From positions 43,524,001-43,588,000 of the forward strand of contig NW_026262668.1 in NCBI RefSeq assembly GCF_021869535.1: a DNA stretch of 64,000 bases, written 5' to 3'. A program made the translations under genes and the position numbers. The notes beneath the pieces are model-generated. The model did no database searches. It worked only from the letters and a program-made list of their open reading frames with translations, and was not told the DNA's origin. Numbering within the stretch: position 1 is the first letter of the stretch; the number at the start of each line of letters is the position of its first letter. Source of the DNA: Mytilus californianus. Its lineage: Eukaryota. Positions 530 through 59,110 of this stretch are shown one piece after another.

Positions 530-610
530 TTTTTATACACCCCTGACTTCCAATTGTTCAGGTTTGAGCGTTCTAATGACCGTAAATCCAGAAAAGCGCT
601 TCGGACGCAG
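530..610 (+). mobile_element. Degenerate retrozyme remnant (family A) with mutated hammerhead core
   Basis: GAGCGTT-CTAATGA-CCGTAAATCCA-GAAAAGCGCTTC-GGACGC aligns with the copy at 55892-55933; core CTGATGA is changed to CTAATGA. Confidence 0.7.
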
Positions 611-1326: not shown

Positions 1327-2219
1327 TTAAAGTATAAGATACCTTTTCAAGAAAAAAAAGTTGTTCGAAAAAGTTTAATAAATAATAAAGACATGTTTAA
1401 GTTAAAGGGTTTATTTAATGTTTGACATTGCGTGTTATTCTATTCTAAAACGAGCAAAAATTCTTTTCAGTCAGTGTTTAATTAATCATATGAATACGCC
1501 ACATGTGGGACAGAAAATGGGACGTTTTATAAATAAGTAAGTATATAAATAAGAGATATCATTAAGCAGGTAGTCATTTACCGATATGTTATCAGAGAGT
1601 ATTAAAATCATTAATATTCAAATAAGTAAACGTGTCATGTATTGACATTTAAAAATGGTTATTCGTCCTAAGTTAATAAGAATAAAGAGAAGTTTCATCT
1701 ATTTCTCAGACTGTTTCTTTAATCATTCAGAATCCTATGGATATAATTGATTTACTCTTGTCTTTTTCAATGTCTTTGATGTTCTTGATAACATGCAAAG
1801 TCCAACCGTACTCCAAACCCCTCCAAAAAATAAGTTAAGATTATAACAAAAAAATCAACGCCTGAGTGTGTGTGGGAGAGAGTTCCGCAACCCCGTTAAA
1901 AGAATACCAAATAAAACCAAACGCGAACTCGGTTTGAAACTCATAACCTTGCAATAACATAAAATACGCTAAAACAGGGAGATTAAAAATTTGTGGAAAC
2001 AGATGTTAATGATTTGAAAACAAAATAACACTTTATAGATTTGGTGATGTTCTGGATTTACTTTCATCGTATATAGTCGTGATGAGCTATATATATAACC
2101 AAAGGTACCTAACAACAATAGCCAAATCCATTAAAGGTCAACTTTGCATGAGAGAGTTGAAACCTTTTGTTTCATAATAATTGCTAAATTAGTCAACGGA
2201 ACTGTCGAAATGCACTTAC

Positions 2220-6658: not shown

Positions 6659-7929
6659 TGCATAACTTGTATCATTTCATTACTTCTATTTATTTATTTC
6701 CCTTTTCTTAAGAATTAATACGTTTCTGCATAATACGTTACCTTTAAATTTCTTTACTTGCTCGGGCTATTACGTAAATTATTATCATACATTAGAAATA
6801 CCTATAGTGTATAGAAAATGCCATCAAATATTATTGTCTTCTTCTCAAAGTAGTTTTCCTATGTTAATCCGTCTTTGCATTTTTTTTTAATATTTCTAAA
6901 GTTTTTGTTTGGTTTATTAATGAACACATGGATGTGTATTACGTAACTCACTACTCTAAATTTAATTATTCAAACTTTTTAAAATACTTTACGTCGAAGT
7001 CAACAATGGGACATAGATCTAATCTATTCATTAAACATCACGATCTATGAAAGAGTCGCATTTTATATTCACGTGATAGGAATGAAAAGCGGTATTTACT
7101 GCCTATAACGACATGAAATTGAATCTGTGTATATGCTTACATAATCAAAAGATAAGTTTATCATGTAGTTATACCTATTGATCAGACAGATGACATCGAA
7201 TCTCTCTCTGGTTTTCAATTATTATTCAAATTCATTCCCATGGTCCATGTATGAAGACAACAACTTGAATAATATAAACAACAATACTTGATAGGTTATT
7301 GCTTGTTTCAGGCATAGTATATTTCTCATATCCATTGCAAATACTTGTCAGAAGCATTACAGTTTTCAAGATTTCACTTAAGCAGCCTATTTTGAATGCG
7401 AAGACTATACTAAATATCTCTTTAACATACTTACATTTCAATTAGCGATGCAAATTTTACATTTTCATCGCTTGTGAAAGTGAAAATGAGACATCAATAT
7501 ATTTTAAATTCTAGTTATATATATTGTTATTACTTTGATGTTTTTCCTCTGTGGTCATCTTGTATGTCTGTCCTGCTCCTTTGTCATAGTTTCTGATGTG
7601 CAACAAGAATGTTCGTATTTCATATTTCTTGTACCATCTTTGAACTAACTAAATCGACTGTAAACAAATATATAAATTCTAATTTGGACTTTTTCGTTAT
7701 ATGTAAAATATGTAGTAATCCGGCAAATAGATAGCACTGGCACTTGTCTCTGAATTTTTTGTTTTTTTAAGGTATATAGGACATTTTTTTTCAGAGACAA
7801 GTGCCTGTGATAGAAAGGGCAAATCGCAATCACATTCTTTAAAGGTAGAATCTATTTTAAAAAGGTCAAGGAATTTTTCATAGTGTCGCATCTTTTATAT
7901 GAAAATAACCTTTTTTTTTCAAATTTGGT

Positions 7930-8010
7930 GCAACCAAAACGCTTTTCTGGATTTACCTCCAACAGGAAACCTTACACCCATAAATTTGAAAGCCAAGGGC
8001 GTATAACTAT
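7930..8010 (-). mobile_element. Degenerate retrozyme remnant (family A)
   Basis: Minus strand reads CTGTTGG-AGGTAAATCCA-GAAAAGCGTTTT, preceded by a TTGGCTTTCAAATT-like segment homologous to 55860-55930. Confidence 0.6.
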
Positions 8011-53030: not shown

Positions 53031-55592
53031 AACTATTCAACAGGTAAACTATACGTACAAGTATACTTTTGCAGTGTTAAATAAAATTTAGGAGTCAATT
53101 GGTGATAAATTATGATAAACTATTTGCAAATTATGCTTGTTTTCGATATTCCCAATGAAACTGGCCATTGGCTAATTTAAGTTATTCTAGGTGTTCGAAT
53201 TATTATGTTTTTTAAGGTTTTTTTACTAAAAAGTTTCAAGTAACCACGGTCAAACAAATACTTATTTACTGGTATATCATTTTGTTTGTTTATTTGTTAT
53301 AGATCTGTTAAAAAAAAGATATGGTATGATTGCCAATAAGACAACTATCTATCAAAGACAAAGGGGCAAATATGTAAACTGTTTTGTTCAGAAATTATTT
53401 CTATTAAATCGATAAGTTGTTGCACGGTGTCGTTCAGCAGATTAACACAATCACCAATTTGTATCTGTCAGCACATTTTTTTCAGCAGACTCATAAGTCA
53501 TAACTGACCATTTTCCTATTTTATCGCGACTTTAATAACTCAATAGTATATGCTTCACTTCAATAACGATGAGCGTCTCTAAATTTGTTTATACAAAACT
53601 TTTAAATTGTTCGATATCACATTAAAATCTTAAAATGAAATGTGATCAGTTTCAGTGAATGACTGCTTGGCTGTAAAATAGTTATGGCTGATTGTTCTTT
53701 CTGAACTAAACTGCATTTTCATGCAGCAAGTTGTAAACTGATCTAAAACTAATCGTATGGTTGAATGATTTTTAAGGTGTTGTCGGGTGGGGTTTAAATA
53801 AAGCAACTGCTTTTTTTACCACCTGTGATAATTTTTTCCTTTTTCCTTCTAGCCTTTAAACTAAATAAGTTTCAAATAAGAATTTGAAGTGAAGAGGCCT
53901 GTCACTAAATATACTTCTAAAATTCACATTAGAAATTATCTGTCATATCGAAGAAAAATGCAACAGAACTTAACGACGGAAGGTCCGATTAAAAAATCGT
54001 CCATAGTTTAATGAATGAAAAGGTCTATAGAAACGTCCGTGAGAAACCCACATTCCAAGACAACAATAAGTCCATTTAAACACACGATATAAAGTTTAAA
54101 TAACCTTAAAAGCGTATCAATTCCTTTTAATTTTGTATGGGAGTTTTACTTTATAATAATAGTTTTAAGATTATGTAAATAACAAAAGAGTAGCCGTGTA
54201 TACACATAAATTTGACCACGGGTTCCATTCTTAATGGTTCTAATTATTGGTTTATAGGAATGATATCATCAATACATGTCTAATACAAACAACATGTAAA
54301 ACACATTTCATGTGGCGTTTCTCTCTCTAAGATATGGTTACCTTTCTTATGATGTGCTCGGATTTATTTTGATAAAAACACAAAAATAAAAAATGATAAA
54401 CAGATTGATAAGGTCAAAGAAATATACTTAAATATATATTTTTCTTGACCAATACTAATTTTCACTCCTGGTAAAGTAATTTTTTATAAACTGAAACAAC
54501 AATGTGGGAGAAGTCTAATGGATTATGCGTAATAAATTGGGTGACGTTCAAGATTTTTTGTTTGATTTACAAAATCTGTTGTTGAAGTAAGGCAAGTTTG
54601 CAACGTCCATTTGCCAATATTAAAGAGATATTAAGGACGATGCCCCATCATAAACATAATCTTTATCTTTCCTGTACCTTTTTTCGTCTTTTTCATTTAG
54701 ACCATCAGGTTTTAAAATATGGAGCTGAGCTGGTGGATCCAATAGTTTTCTCGTCTCCTTCTCGCTGCGGTGTCCTACTCCGTGTTCACTTCTATAATTT
54801 GAAAAGTAACTTTATCAAAATGATGTTTCTTTGAGAGAAGATGTCTTGTGAGGGGACAGTTTTTGTTGGTTTTGTACCACGACCGATGGTTATTCAGCCG
54901 ACTATTAAATTTGTCAATTTTCTTTCACGTACTGAATGATACAGGTGTTACATAAATTGAGTTTTCCGTTTAACAGTTGGAATTTACGTATATGGTATAA
55001 CTTTGTATTGTAAAGGAGCTTATAAAAGAACTGCTAGTATTTTCAGCTTTACAACACAAACAATGCCTTCTCCTACATTGTTTGTAGAAAACAGGAGATG
55101 GAGTAGGTTCCTTTGTTAATACAGCTTGAAATAATTTGTAACGGATGTTTTTGGTCTTCTGAAGGCCATGACTGATAGTGAGGGAAACACTTTTTTTTCA
55201 AATTGGAGTAATTTTCTATAATTTTCCAAAGCTTTCGAACAATGGATGACACATTTTTGAAAGCAGGATGGTAATTGAGTACAAGAGGTATTCTGTTGGC
55301 TCCATGATTCTTATCCCTGTACCCCAGAAGTTCTTTTCGGTCAATTCTGTTTGCTTTTTTCGAAACTTGTATATATACTGTGTTCATTGTCTCCTCGAGC
55401 ATCAAGATGTTTACGTAGTTGTCAAAGTCTAGCATTTTGCTTATTTTCAGTTGCGTATATTCTCTTGATTCGCAGTGACTTGACTGAAAGGGATACCACG
55501 GGAGCATTGTTTTGGAAGGCAACTTGTTTGGAGAGAGAAATTGCTTAACGTCCAGTGGCAAATTAAATGCATATTCAGGATGAGAACATGTT

Positions 55593-55967
55593 AACGTGTT
55601 GTTTTCAATTTTTTACATCACTGGGTCGATACCTCTGCTGGTGGACTATCAGTCCCCGAGGGTATCATCAGCTCAGTAGTCAGTACTTTGGTACTGACAT
55701 GATTTATAACAAACCTTTCTAAAATTTTCCGTTTATAAATTTTCAAATTATAAAGAAACTAAGGATTCAACTCCCTCAGGCAAAGTTGACCTTAGATGAA
55801 TTTGGCTATTTGTTTTAGGTATTTTTGTCATATAGCTCTTCAACTGTTTCGGTACTTGTACATCCCTCGGATTTCAAATGTTCGGCTCTGAGCGTTCCTG
55901 ATGAAGGTAAATCCAGAAAAGCGCTTCGGACGCATGAAATTATTAAACGTGTTGTTTTCAATTTTTT
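55593..55967 (+). mobile_element. Retrozyme-like non-autonomous retroelement, 353-bp unit plus 22-bp terminal redundancy
   Basis: AACGTGTTGTTTTCAATTTTTT at 55593-55614 and 55946-55967; contains a hammerhead; homologues at 530-610, 7930-8010 and 58890-59110. Confidence 0.75.
55892..55933 (+). ncRNA. Minimal type I hammerhead ribozyme
   Basis: Stem I GCGUUC/GGACGC, core CUGAUGA (55898-55904), short stem II GG/CC flanked by A residues, GAAA (55916-55919), palindromic stem III AAGCGCUU, predicted cut after UUC at 55927. Confidence 0.7.
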
Positions 55968-57240
55968 GATGTAATATGAATATTACCCCTGCTTTGTACT
56001 AGACCGACAGGATTTTTAATGTGCTCGTTCACAATGTAACAGTCCAAAGGAAGACATGTCTCCCTACCCAGACACATTATTCTTATTCCGAGCCGACATG
56101 TCTTTGCTCTTGCTACTCCTTAATGCAGCATGCTTAGTGGAGAAACAGCAAATACCCAATTTTTAAAGTCTTTGGTATGACCCGGCCGAGGCACCCGAGG
56201 CGAACATGCTACCACGAGACCACAGAGGCGGTTAAAAGAGAGAAATTGATGCTTGTCTGTTTTCTTCATATGGAGATCCGTTATCATTGTTACGTTCTGG
56301 ATGTTACTAGTAGTATCAAGGAAGTTAATTTTTACCATTGATGTTTCGTGTGTAAATTGAATCGAATGATGGAAAGAGTTACAGTGTCCAAGAAATTCAT
56401 TCAGGCGAATCTGTCCATTTAAAATCATTATCATCAATAAATCGACCATGATAATGGCTGGTATGGAGCACTAGCCAAGAGGCGTTTTTTCAAGTTGGTC
56501 TAAATATGTTGTCATATGACAGGACCACTTTTTGCCCATACTAGTGCCGTCTACCTGTAGATAGTGTTTGTCATTAAAAGAGAACTTGTTGCTCTCCAGC
56601 ACTAGTTTCATAAGTGTAATCAGGGACTCAGTTGGAGGATTTTTGTCTCTCCGGTTGTTCCATACCTCTTCATACGCTGCAATTCTATCGTCTTGTGGAA
56701 TATTTGTATACAAAGATTACACGCCCATGGATGCGAGTTTGGTATTGTTTGTAAAGGATTTAGGCTTTCTATTTTCTTTAGATAATCAGTAGTATATTGA
56801 CTCGTCATATAAGAGGGGAGTTCTTTAACACGACCTCTTAAAAGAGTCTATAAATTCATAAATATTTTCTGTTGGATGATCATTTGCAGAAACGATTTGT
56901 CGACCTGGATTCATACCATGTTCATTGGTATATATATATATACCAATGAACATGTTGATAATCTGAGTGTCCTATGAGACGATATCATATGCACAGATAC
57001 TTTCCTGTGGAAGTTTTTTGAAAATTCGTTCTTTTTAGAATCATTCAAATTTAACATGGGGGTGATAGATCCAATGTTTGGTGTAAGCCCTGTGTACATC
57101 AAAGAACCCCTGCAAAAACGGTTTGAGACTGAAAGCAAGTTTTGAACAATTAGTATTTACATTTTGCTGGTTGGTTGTTTTCTATTAAAATAAGGATACT
57201 GATAAAAGGTATGAATATACCAACAAGATGAAATAATATC

Positions 57241-58889: not shown

Positions 58890-59110
58890 GAAAGTCAATA
58901 AAGCGCTTTCTGGATTTACTTTCATCAGGAATTTCAAACCCAAAATTTTGAAAGCCTAGGATGTATAAAGACATGAGGAGCCGGCTTTAAGACCAAAAAG
59001 GGACATGTAAAAAAGAATACTCAAATACATCTTTGCATTGCCTGAGGGAGTTCGACCCTTTTATGATTAATTTTATCAATAATGTTTCAAAATAGCCTGT
59101 TCTCTAAAGA
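58890..59110 (-). mobile_element. Retrozyme remnant (family A)
   Basis: Minus strand CTGATGA-AAGTAAATCCA-GAAAGCGCTTT and GAACTCCCTCAGGCAA, homologous to 55765-55927; stem I is lost. Confidence 0.7.

What the first reader, a model, noticed from the sequence alone, without database searches (positions are those of the whole stretch)
55593..55967. Circularly permuted retrozyme monomer: possible genomic imprint of a reverse-transcribed circular RNA
Seen: a 353-bp unit with a 22-bp terminal direct repeat and a near-intact type I hammerhead. The predicted cut (55927/55928) lies inside the insert. The copy starts 18 nt downstream of the equivalent cut position, runs through the junction and continues 40 nt past it. 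Known: metazoan non-LTR retrozymes are about 170-400-nt units with type I hammerheads, expressed as linear and circular RNAs and thought to be mobilised by Penelope-like RTs. Inference: a linear monomer cut at both ends could not template this, so the template was circular or multimeric RNA read for slightly more than one round. The A-flanked 2-bp stem II is non-canonical and the palindromic stem III (AAGCGCUU) suggests dimeric activity.
Basis: partly seen in the sequence, partly recalled or inferred. Interest (0 to 1): 0.8.

Follow-up and report, generated by a model that had tools for sequence, protein, structure and literature searches.

The report
Mussel retrozyme copy, 1.06 units long
This is one ordinary insertion of a very abundant, non-coding mussel jumping element (a hammerhead-bearing "retrozyme"); its short end-to-end overlap is real and shows it was copied from an RNA longer than one cut unit, but whether that RNA was a circle or an uncut chain cannot be told, and the element class and the copying model are already published.

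Summary
An exact 22-nt direct repeat lies 353 bp apart (55593-55614 and 55946-55967). A type I hammerhead core sits at 55892-55933, with the predicted cut at 55927/55928.

The 22-mer is not a target-site duplication. Eleven paralogous empty sites, and RNA reads, join 55592/3 directly to 55969. The 22-mer also lies inside tandem arrays of the same unit.

The copy belongs to a family with at least about 2,000 copies in a Mytilus-type genome. It is related to the published Mg353 retrozyme but carries a variant hammerhead with a 2-bp, A-flanked stem II.

Across 55 insertions, nearly all 3' ends fall at unit positions 22-26, 40-44 nt past the cut. The 5' ends vary, giving lengths from 43 nt to about 6 units, and roughly 30% exceed one unit. 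The window copy is therefore one point on a 5'-truncation continuum, not a special "just over one round" event.

This matches Penelope-like reverse transcription, which starts at a fixed internal site. Every template had an intact cut site, so it was either an uncut multimer or a religated circle. The data do not separate the two.

It is a new member of a known kind. Other follow-ups in this scan reached similar conclusions for other retrozyme families in this genome.

The parts
55593..55968 (+). The whole insertion: 375 inserted bases, 1.06 units of a 353-bp retrozyme. It spans 55593 or 55594 to 55968; one A is shared with the target, so the 5' junction is ambiguous by 1 nt.
   Evidence: 11 paralogous empty sites read ...CATGTT-A-ATGTAAT.... 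13 RNA reads in run X21 join 55593 to 55969. The copy differs from the family consensus at 7 of 353 positions.
55593..55614 (+). 5' copy of the 22-mer (unit positions 1-22). It is the tail end of the upstream, 5'-truncated unit.
   Evidence: The same 22-mer followed by ACATCAC is the internal unit-to-unit junction, found 571 times exactly in the genome.
55946..55967 (+). 3' terminal 22-mer. This is the family-wide 3' end of insertions and the inferred start site of reverse transcription, 40 nt past the hammerhead cut.
   Evidence: 3' ends fall at unit positions 22-26 in 23 of 25 loci (one exception at position 74, one array runs off its locus). The 22-mer followed by a non-A base occurs 429 times exactly.
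55968..55968 (+). One extra G between the terminal T-run and the target. It is either untemplated or a miscopied unit position 23 (A in the consensus).
   Evidence: Filled site compared with 11 empty paralogous sites.
55892..55933 (+). Type I hammerhead motif, with the parts and coordinates listed under the observation check. The stem II region has only 2 GC pairs flanked by A.A. The predicted cut is 55927/55928.
   Evidence: Read. Identical to the family consensus. The exact 30-mer occurs 2107 times in the genome. No Rfam hit. The fold is not the MFE. Activity not tested.
55619..55683 (+). Structured block (two hairpins in the predicted fold) that is visibly homologous to the published M. galloprovincialis Mg353 retrozyme.
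   Evidence: Compared by eye between and the Mg353 construct sequence in the supplement of PMC7229834. Hairpins appear in the circular fold.
55542..55592 (.). 5' part of the host repeat into which the retrozyme inserted.
   Evidence: Aligns to 11 paralogous copies up to the base before the insertion.
55969..56235 (.). 3' part of the host repeat (at least 1518 first-look candidates in the genome).

Best explanation
Window 55593-55968 is a single retrotransposition insertion of a young, high-copy, non-coding Mytilus retrozyme family. The family has a 353-bp unit and a variant type I hammerhead.

Inferred mechanism: a Penelope-like reverse transcriptase nicked an AT-rich site inside another repeat. 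It began cDNA synthesis at a fixed internal site of the retrozyme RNA, at unit positions 22-26, 40-44 nt 3' of the hammerhead cut. It copied 375 nt and then stopped. Because 375 exceeds the 353-nt unit, the copy carries 22 nt twice.

Shown: the single clean insertion, the absence of a TSD, the fixed 3' end, the variable 5' ends, and the continuum of lengths.

Inferred: that the enzyme is a Penelope-like RT, and that the template RNA had an intact bond at the cut site. The template was therefore either an unprocessed multimeric transcript or a religated circle. Which of the two is unresolved.
For: - Empty site: 11 paralogous copies of the host repeat are contiguous across the insertion point and lack the 22-mer. 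13 RNA reads join 55593 to 55969.
- The 22-mer is internal to arrays: units repeat at 353-bp spacing with the 22-mer at each junction.
- Fixed 3' end: unit positions 22-26 in 23 of 25 loci.
- Variable 5' ends: in an unbiased sample of 30 insertions anchored on the 3' end, lengths run 43, 45, 53 ... 366, 378, 411, 535, 560, 611, 760, ~899 nt with no break at 353, and 8 of 30 exceed one unit. Clustering the exact 22-mer positions on contig C1 gives 21 of 67 insertions with an internal junction (hand count).
- Every one of the 55 copies is at least 43 nt long, so each spans the cut site.
- Literature: a Penelope-like RT starts internally, downstream of its hammerhead, on unprocessed multi-copy RNA and targets AT-rich DNA (PMC11167929). 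Mussel retrozymes of 350-390 nt, including the Mg353 construct, are abundant circRNAs proposed to be copied into oligomeric cDNA (PMC7229834). Retrozymes are argued to derive from PLE pLTRs (10.64898/2026.07.22.740005).
- The published Mg353 hammerhead 32-mer occurs 1536 times exactly in this genome.
- RNA reads from three runs cross the unit-to-unit junction ('goes back 352/353').
Against: - No autonomous Penelope-like element sharing this hammerhead and tail was identified.
- No TSD was found at this copy. Family-wide there is only a weak excess of 3-8-nt junction matches (mean 4.39 against 3.37, p=0.005), so the integration chemistry is not pinned down.
- An originally longer array could have lost whole units by unequal recombination without changing its ends.
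- The samples are small: 25 biased plus 30 unbiased loci.
Confidence: 0.8

Rival explanations
1. The template was specifically a circular monomeric RNA, and the RT went round it slightly more than once (rolling-circle reverse transcription).
For: - Every copy spans the cut site, so the bond was intact or religated.
- In mussels the circular form is reported as by far the most abundant retrozyme RNA, and RT of circles into oligomeric cDNA is the published model (PMC7229834).
- Lengths pass 353 nt smoothly.
- In arrays L022 and L026 nearly all differences between units are singletons (30 against 2, and 9 against 1), as expected if the units were identical at birth.
- Array L002 alternates strictly A-B-A-B-A at 6 of 6 sites, as a dimeric circle would give.
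- Pure 5'-truncating copying of linear multimers could only shorten arrays over generations (inference).
Against: - All these patterns are also produced by copying a linear multimeric transcript of an existing array.
- Arrays L005, L009, L011 and L018 carry variants shared by subsets of units, for example X-B-C-B-C-Y. That needs DNA-level duplication or a heterogeneous multimer template.
- The only biochemically studied PLE RT used unprocessed linear RNA (PMC11167929).
- Junction-spanning RNA reads cannot distinguish a circle from a tandem transcript.
Confidence: 0.35
2. The template was a linear, unprocessed multimeric transcript of a genomic array. The RT started at the fixed internal site of a downstream unit and stopped in the upstream unit (a Penelope-type partial tandem).
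For: - PAc Penelope-like RT: internal initiation, multi-copy mRNA as substrate, hammerhead cleavage not needed, and no reads ending at the cut site (PMC11167929).
- Here too, no pile-up of read ends appears at 55927/55928 despite a depth of about 120-150 reads in run X21.
- The hammerhead has a weak 2-bp, A.A-flanked stem II. It fails all Rfam models and is not the MFE fold, so many transcripts may stay uncut.
- Genomic arrays of up to at least 6 units exist as sources.
- Several arrays have heterogeneous units.
Against: - The related Mg353 retrozyme self-cleaves and accumulates mainly as circles in mussel tissues (PMC7229834).
- The model does not explain how long arrays are regenerated.
- No parent-daughter pair of arrays was found.
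Confidence: 0.45
3. The copy was inserted as a longer array (2.06, 3.06 ... units) and later collapsed to 1.06 units by unequal recombination between units.
For: Unit loss or gain by recombination would keep both ends. L018 (X-B-C-B-C-Y) shows that DNA-level duplication of units does occur in this family.
Against: - The unbiased length distribution is continuous and dominated by sub-unit copies, which cannot be collapse products. Direct 5' truncation explains 375 nt without an extra step.
- No trace of a hybrid unit: the single unit differs from the consensus at only 7 scattered sites.
Confidence: 0.1
4. The 22-mer is a plain target-site duplication flanking a 331-bp element.
For: Only the local picture: a direct repeat flanking a repeat-family insert.
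Against: - 11 paralogous empty sites and RNA reads lack the 22-mer.
- The 22-mer is the internal junction of tandem arrays (571 exact internal junctions).
- It is the shared 3' end of insertions at unrelated loci.
Confidence: 0.01
5. The copy arose at the DNA level, for example by reintegration of an extrachromosomal circular DNA from an array, without reverse transcription.
For: Tandem repeats can shed circular DNA, and a randomly linearised circle would give a permuted copy (general knowledge, not tested).
Against: Random linearisation predicts variable ends on both sides. Instead the 3' end is fixed and only the 5' end varies, which is the hallmark of reverse transcription from a defined start.
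Confidence: 0.03

Closest known systems
Mytilus galloprovincialis non-LTR retrozymes (Mg353 construct; Cervera and de la Pena 2020, PMC7229834)
   Same: - Same host type: the published Mg353 hammerhead 32-mer occurs 1536 times exactly in this genome.
- Same unit size (353 nt), low GC (38%), non-coding, and tandem arrays from partial dimers to multimers.
- Type I hammerhead with an 8-nt palindromic stem III.
- Clear homology in the block 55619-55683 and around the hammerhead (by eye).
- RNA that crosses the unit junction.
   Different: - The hammerhead differs. Stem II is AGG/CCA, with only two GC pairs and an A.A at positions 10.1/11.1, where Mg353 has the 4-bp GTCT/AGAC.
- Stem III is AAGCGCTT where Mg353 has ACGCGCGT.
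- The 44 nt after the cut, including the terminal 22-mer, are unrelated.
- The paper's two hammerhead consensus families are described as differing only in the loops and the upper part of helix I, so this variant (2107 exact copies) seems not to be among them. Its cleavage and circularisation have not been tested.
Penelope-like element insertion signature (PAc of Anolis; Frangieh et al. 2024, PMC11167929)
   Same: - Reverse transcription starts at fixed, adjacent internal sites downstream of the hammerhead, so genomic copies share a defined 3' end.
- Copies are partial tandems with 5' truncation.
- Targets are AT-rich.
- Hammerhead cleavage is not needed, and no reads end at the cut.
   Different: - Here the element has no ORF, and the whole unit is pLTR-like.
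- The start lies 40-44 nt from the cut, against roughly 85-92 nt in PAc.
- No cognate RT was identified or tested.
Newt satellite 2 / axolotl retrozymes and minimal PLE hammerheads that act as dimers
   Same: Stem III is short in cis (2 bp plus a GCGC loop) and could form an 8-bp helix between two motifs.
   Different: Dimeric cleavage is shown for those RNAs. Here it is only suggested by the palindrome, and cofolding gives just a small gain (-34.9 against 2 x -16.5 kcal/mol).
Plant LTR retrozymes (Cervera et al. 2016, PMC4918200)
   Same: Non-autonomous, hammerhead-bearing, with circRNA intermediates proposed.
   Different: Plant elements have type III hammerheads in true LTRs, a PBS and PPT, 4-bp TSDs and Gypsy-type mobilisation. 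None of these applies here.

Membership tests
Metazoan non-LTR retrozyme | Unit of about 150-450 bp found as tandem copies, from partial dimers to multimers | tested here: met
   353-bp unit. Insertions of 1.06 to at least 5.9 units in 25 loci. 571 exact internal junctions.
Metazoan non-LTR retrozyme | Each unit carries a type I hammerhead motif | tested here: met
   CUGAUGA, GAAA and the UC cut triplet are present. Stem I is open-ended (6 bp), so the motif is type I. The family consensus is the same. Stem II is non-canonical; see the hammerhead rows.
Metazoan non-LTR retrozyme | Low GC and no coding capacity | tested here: met
   GC 0.38. No ORF of at least 160 aa overlaps the element.
Metazoan non-LTR retrozyme | Expressed as linear and circular monomeric RNA | tested here: inconclusive
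   RNA reads from 3 runs cover the unit and cross the unit junction. That cannot distinguish circles from tandem transcripts. No ends pile up at the cut.
Metazoan non-LTR retrozyme | Sequence homology to a described retrozyme (Mg353) | tested here: inconclusive
   Homologous blocks were seen by eye between and the supplement text.
Hammerhead ribozyme, type I (Rfam RF00163 and related models) | Conserved catalytic core C3-A9, G12-A14, A15.1-U16.1, H17 | tested here: met
   All core positions present at 55898-55904, 55916-55919 and 55926-55927.
Hammerhead ribozyme, type I (Rfam RF00163 and related models) | Stable stem II closed by G10.1-C11.1 | tested here: not met
   A.A at 10.1/11.1 and only two GC pairs (55905-55915). 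The family consensus is the same.
Hammerhead ribozyme, type I (Rfam RF00163 and related models) | Scores against the curated covariance models | tested here: not met
   No hit at gathering score over the window, nor at E<=10 over 55400-56200.
Hammerhead ribozyme, type I (Rfam RF00163 and related models) | Self-cleavage at the predicted site | not testable with these tools
   Only indirect evidence: no excess of read ends at 55927/55928 in three RNA-seq runs.
Penelope-like-element-mobilised non-autonomous element | Defined 3' end downstream of the hammerhead, shared by copies at unrelated loci | tested here: met
   Unit positions 22-26 in 23 of 25 loci. 429 exact termini followed by a non-A base.
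Penelope-like-element-mobilised non-autonomous element | 5'-truncated and partial-tandem copies | tested here: met
   Lengths from 43 nt to about 6 units, continuous.
Penelope-like-element-mobilised non-autonomous element | An autonomous PLE in the same genome sharing the 3' region (hammerhead plus tail) | not tested
No RT ORF in the window.
TSD-flanked SINE-like insertion | The flanking direct repeat is present once at the empty site | tested here: not met
   The empty sites lack the 22-mer.

The most novel reading that the evidence does not exclude
The family's insertion scars are a natural record of rolling-circle reverse transcription. A Penelope-like RT would start at one fixed internal site of a hammerhead-made circular RNA and run round it 0.1 to about 6 times. 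The strictly alternating A-B-A-B-A array would then be the copy of a dimeric circle. This would be the first genomic evidence for the circRNA-templated step that is so far only a model for animal retrozymes.
Probability: 0.3. Interest if true: 0.6.

Novelty: new member of a known kind. Interest (0 to 1): 0.3.

Why it matters
Animal retrozymes and their proposed copying by Penelope-like enzymes are published, but the reverse-transcription step has not been shown for them.

This family offers a large, young set of insertion scars: roughly 1,800 insertions by extrapolation, about 97% identical. The 3' end is sharply defined 40 nt past the ribozyme cut, and every copy spans the cut site. A fully processed linear monomer is therefore never the template.

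The family also thrives with a hammerhead whose stem II is degenerate. Either efficient self-cleavage is not needed for spread, or this variant works only as a dimer.

Neither point changes the field's picture. Both make the circle-versus-multimer question testable in a tractable animal.

Tried and rejected
- **Rfam scans.** At gathering score on the window and at E<=10 on 55400-56200 there was no hammerhead hit, only a chance S15 match.
- **Upstream flank as a decayed partial unit.** The stretch TTCAGGATGAGAACATGTT looked like one by eye. Local alignment scored below the shuffle mean (16 against 18.5), so I rejected it.
- **Long TSDs.** The longest common substring between flanks equals the mismatched-locus control (5.9 against 5.9). 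Junction-anchored matches show only a weak excess. No target motif emerged, and the flanks are about as AT-rich as the window.
- **Circle versus multimer from array homogeneity.** Intra-array identity is 97.95% and inter-array 96.67%. Variant patterns are mixed. This is not decisive.
- **Run-off at a cleaved 5' end.** 5' ends are enriched across the hammerhead segment (unit 302-342) in both the first and the second round. They scatter on both sides of the cut, so they are not clean run-offs.
- **RNA reads for cleavage.** No pile-up of ends at the cut. Only about 6% of each run was read, and most reads came from related families.
- **More loci.** The 5'-end statistics therefore rest on 55 loci, and the PLE partner search was not possible.
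- **Nearby features.** The two ORFs of at least 160 aa in the window have no Pfam family. No tRNAs and no tandem repeats lie near the copy.
- **Circular fold of the unit.** Only modestly more stable than shuffles (z about -2).

Full report
**1. The observation**

- One search finds an exact 22-nt direct repeat at 55593-55614 and 55946-55967, 353 bp apart.
- One search shows a hammerhead core on the + strand: stem I 5' strand GCGTTC (55892-55897), CTGATGA (55898-55904), a stem II region AGGTAAATCCA (55905-55915), GAAA (55916-55919), the palindrome AAGCGCTT (55919-55926), C17 (55927) and stem I 3' strand GGACGC (55928-55933).
- The predicted cut is 55927/55928. The copy therefore begins 18 nt after the equivalent cut position and ends 40 nt after the real one.
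- All catalytic-core positions are present.
- Stem II has only two GC pairs flanked by A.A at positions 10.1/11.1.
- Stem III is 2 bp plus a GCGC loop in cis, or an 8-bp helix between two motifs.
- No Rfam model matches at gathering score or at E<=10.
- The hammerhead fold is not the monomer's minimum-energy fold (-3.5 against -16.5 kcal/mol).
- "Near-intact type I hammerhead" is therefore fair for the core. Activity is open.

**2. It is a family, in a mussel**

- Searching the window's own genome (1.65 Gb, 175 contigs) with the 375 bases gives 2149 first-look candidates. The scored copies are 94-98% identical, and many sit in arrays with 353-bp spacing.
- The exact 30-nt hammerhead core of this family occurs 2107 times.
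- The exact hammerhead 32-mer of the published Mytilus galloprovincialis Mg353 retrozyme occurs 1536 times.
- An RNA run labelled "mollusc metagenome" holds the unit.
- By eye, the unit shares blocks with the Mg353 construct printed in the supplement of PMC7229834: the region 55619-55683 and the hammerhead surroundings. Stem II, stem III and the 44 nt after the cut differ.
- That paper describes mussel retrozymes of 350-390 bp. They self-cleave at about 0.1 per min, accumulate mainly as circRNA and are circularised by RtcB. It proposes that circles are reverse-transcribed into oligomeric cDNA.

**3. The 22-mer is not a target-site duplication**

- Both flanks belong to another repeat.
- In 11 paralogous copies of that host repeat, the sequence runs straight across the insertion point as ...CATGTT-A-ATGTAAT... 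The filled site has 375 extra bases there, ending in the T-run plus one extra G at 55968.
- 13 RNA reads of run X21, starting at 12 places, join 55593 to 55969. They carry the paralogs' A at 55986, so they come from paralogs, not from an empty allele of this locus.
- The 22-mer followed by ACATCAC is the internal junction of arrays, found 571 times exactly.
- The copy is thus a single clean insertion with 0-1 nt of junction ambiguity and no TSD.

**4. Architecture of the family**

In 25 independent loci that contain at least 375 bases of the unit:
- The 3' end lies at unit positions 22-26 in 23 loci. One exception ends at position 74, and one array runs off its locus.
- The 5' ends lie anywhere in the unit.
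- Total lengths run from 1.06 to at least 5.9 units.

I then drew a sample unbiased for length by searching the 22-mer followed by a non-A base. This gave 429 exact sites, of which the first 30 were fetched. Aligned back from the 3' end, the lengths are 43, 45, 53, 58, 59, 66, 74, 100, 124, 128, 171, 183, 195, 220, 248, 252, 256, 265, 288, 316, 330, 340, 366, 378, 411, 535, 560, 611, 760 and about 899 nt.
- 22 of the 30 are shorter than one unit, and 8 are longer.
- There is no break at 353.

Clustering the listed exact 22-mer positions on contig C1 by hand gives 46 insertions with only a terminal 22-mer and 21 with at least one internal junction, about 31%.

The window copy (375 nt) is therefore one point on a 5'-truncation continuum with a fixed 3' end. 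Because that end lies 40 nt past the cut, every copy examined (all at least 43 nt) spans the cut site. A hammerhead-processed linear monomer was never the template.

**5. Mechanism**

- A fixed 3' end with variable 5' truncation is the hallmark of target-primed reverse transcription.
- The defined start lies inside the repeat unit, downstream of the hammerhead. That matches what was shown in vitro for the Penelope-like element PAc: initiation at adjacent internal sites not homologous to the target, multi-copy unprocessed RNA as substrate, AT-rich targets, hammerhead cleavage dispensable, and no reads ending at the cut (PMC11167929).
- A 2026 preprint argues from phylogeny that animal retrozymes derive from PLE pLTRs.
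- I therefore read the copy as a Penelope-type insertion. The enzyme assignment is an inference, because no partner element was identified here.

**6. Circle or multimer?**

The data do not decide.
- Intra-array unit identity (97.95%) only slightly exceeds inter-array identity (96.67%).
- In L022 and L026 nearly all differences are singletons, as if the units were identical at birth.
- L002 alternates strictly A-B-A-B-A at 6 of 6 informative sites, as a dimeric circle would give.
- L018 reads X-B-C-B-C-Y, and L005, L009 and L011 have variants shared by subsets of units. These need DNA-level duplication or a heterogeneous template.
- RNA reads from three runs cross the unit junction. Tandem transcripts and circles give the same reads.
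- No pile-up of read ends appears at 55927/55928, although only about 6% of each run was read.
- 5' ends are enriched across the hammerhead segment in both the first round (lengths 43-74) and the second round (391-425). They fall on both sides of the cut. This looks more like pausing at a structured region than run-off at a cleaved end. The samples are small.

**7. Other checks**

- The upstream flank is not a decayed partial unit.
- There are no long TSDs. Junction-anchored matches of 3-8 nt that begin in the T-run show only a weak excess.
- There is no target motif.
- No tRNA, tandem repeat or Pfam-bearing ORF lies nearby.
- The circular fold is modestly more stable than shuffles (z about -2, 58-62% paired).
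- Older related fragments in the window keep the block GTAAATCCAGAAA(A)GCG invariant.

**8. Verdict**

The template was longer than a processed monomer, and the 22-mer is not a TSD.
- The "circularly permuted imprint of a circle" reading is not distinguishable from the ordinary Penelope-type partial tandem. The predicted variable permutation points are absent.
- The element class, its host and the copying model are all published.
- The variant-hammerhead family and its insertion statistics appear to be new detail.
- Other follow-ups in this scan reached similar conclusions for other retrozyme families of the same genome. These are unchecked notes, not independent evidence.

**Limits**

Noticed in passing
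window 55542-55592 and 55969-56235; also 55440-55543: The retrozyme landed inside another abundant short repeat (at least 1518 first-look candidates). A different repeat family (at least 2182 candidates) abuts it upstream. Neither was classified.
   Followed up: partly
L002:927-2582 (G000:C143:64135252-64136907): A 4.69-unit array whose units alternate strictly A-B-A-B-A at 6 of 6 informative sites, giving a 2-unit higher-order period. L018:850-2925 reads X-B-C-B-C-Y, a local duplication of two units.
   Followed up: partly
G000:C13:18398559-18398913; C13:32966914-32967144; C35:31122778-31134613 (positions): The internal-junction 29-mer recurs at 163-bp, 202-bp and about 700-bp spacings. This suggests arrays of internally deleted short units and arrays with a dimer period in the same family.
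   Followed up: no
G000:C13:44792172, 44797610, 44803051, 44808494: Four identical insertion termini 5.44 kb apart: one copy carried along in a 5.4-kb segmental tandem repeat.
   Followed up: no
55 loci of this family: 5' ends of insertions are enriched across the hammerhead segment (unit positions 302-342) in both the first round (lengths 43-74 nt, 7 of 30) and the second round (391-425 nt, 9-10 of 25). They fall on both sides of the cut. This suggests RT pausing at the folded ribozyme rather than clean run-off at a cleaved end.
   Followed up: partly
window 533-609 (+), 2092-2201 (-), 7922-7999 (-), 58901-58968 (-): Older fragments of related retrozyme families, 77-82% identical to the unit. 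The three that cover the hammerhead region keep GTAAATCCAGAAA(A)GCG invariant while the CTGATGA box has decayed in two of them.
   Followed up: partly
window 55941 and 55967 (loose ends in RNA reads): Reads from another expressed subfamily diverge after 55941 but carry a similar tail (...AAGTGTTGTTTTCATTTTTTTAC...). Several families may therefore share the 3' tail and perhaps the same helper enzyme.
   Followed up: no
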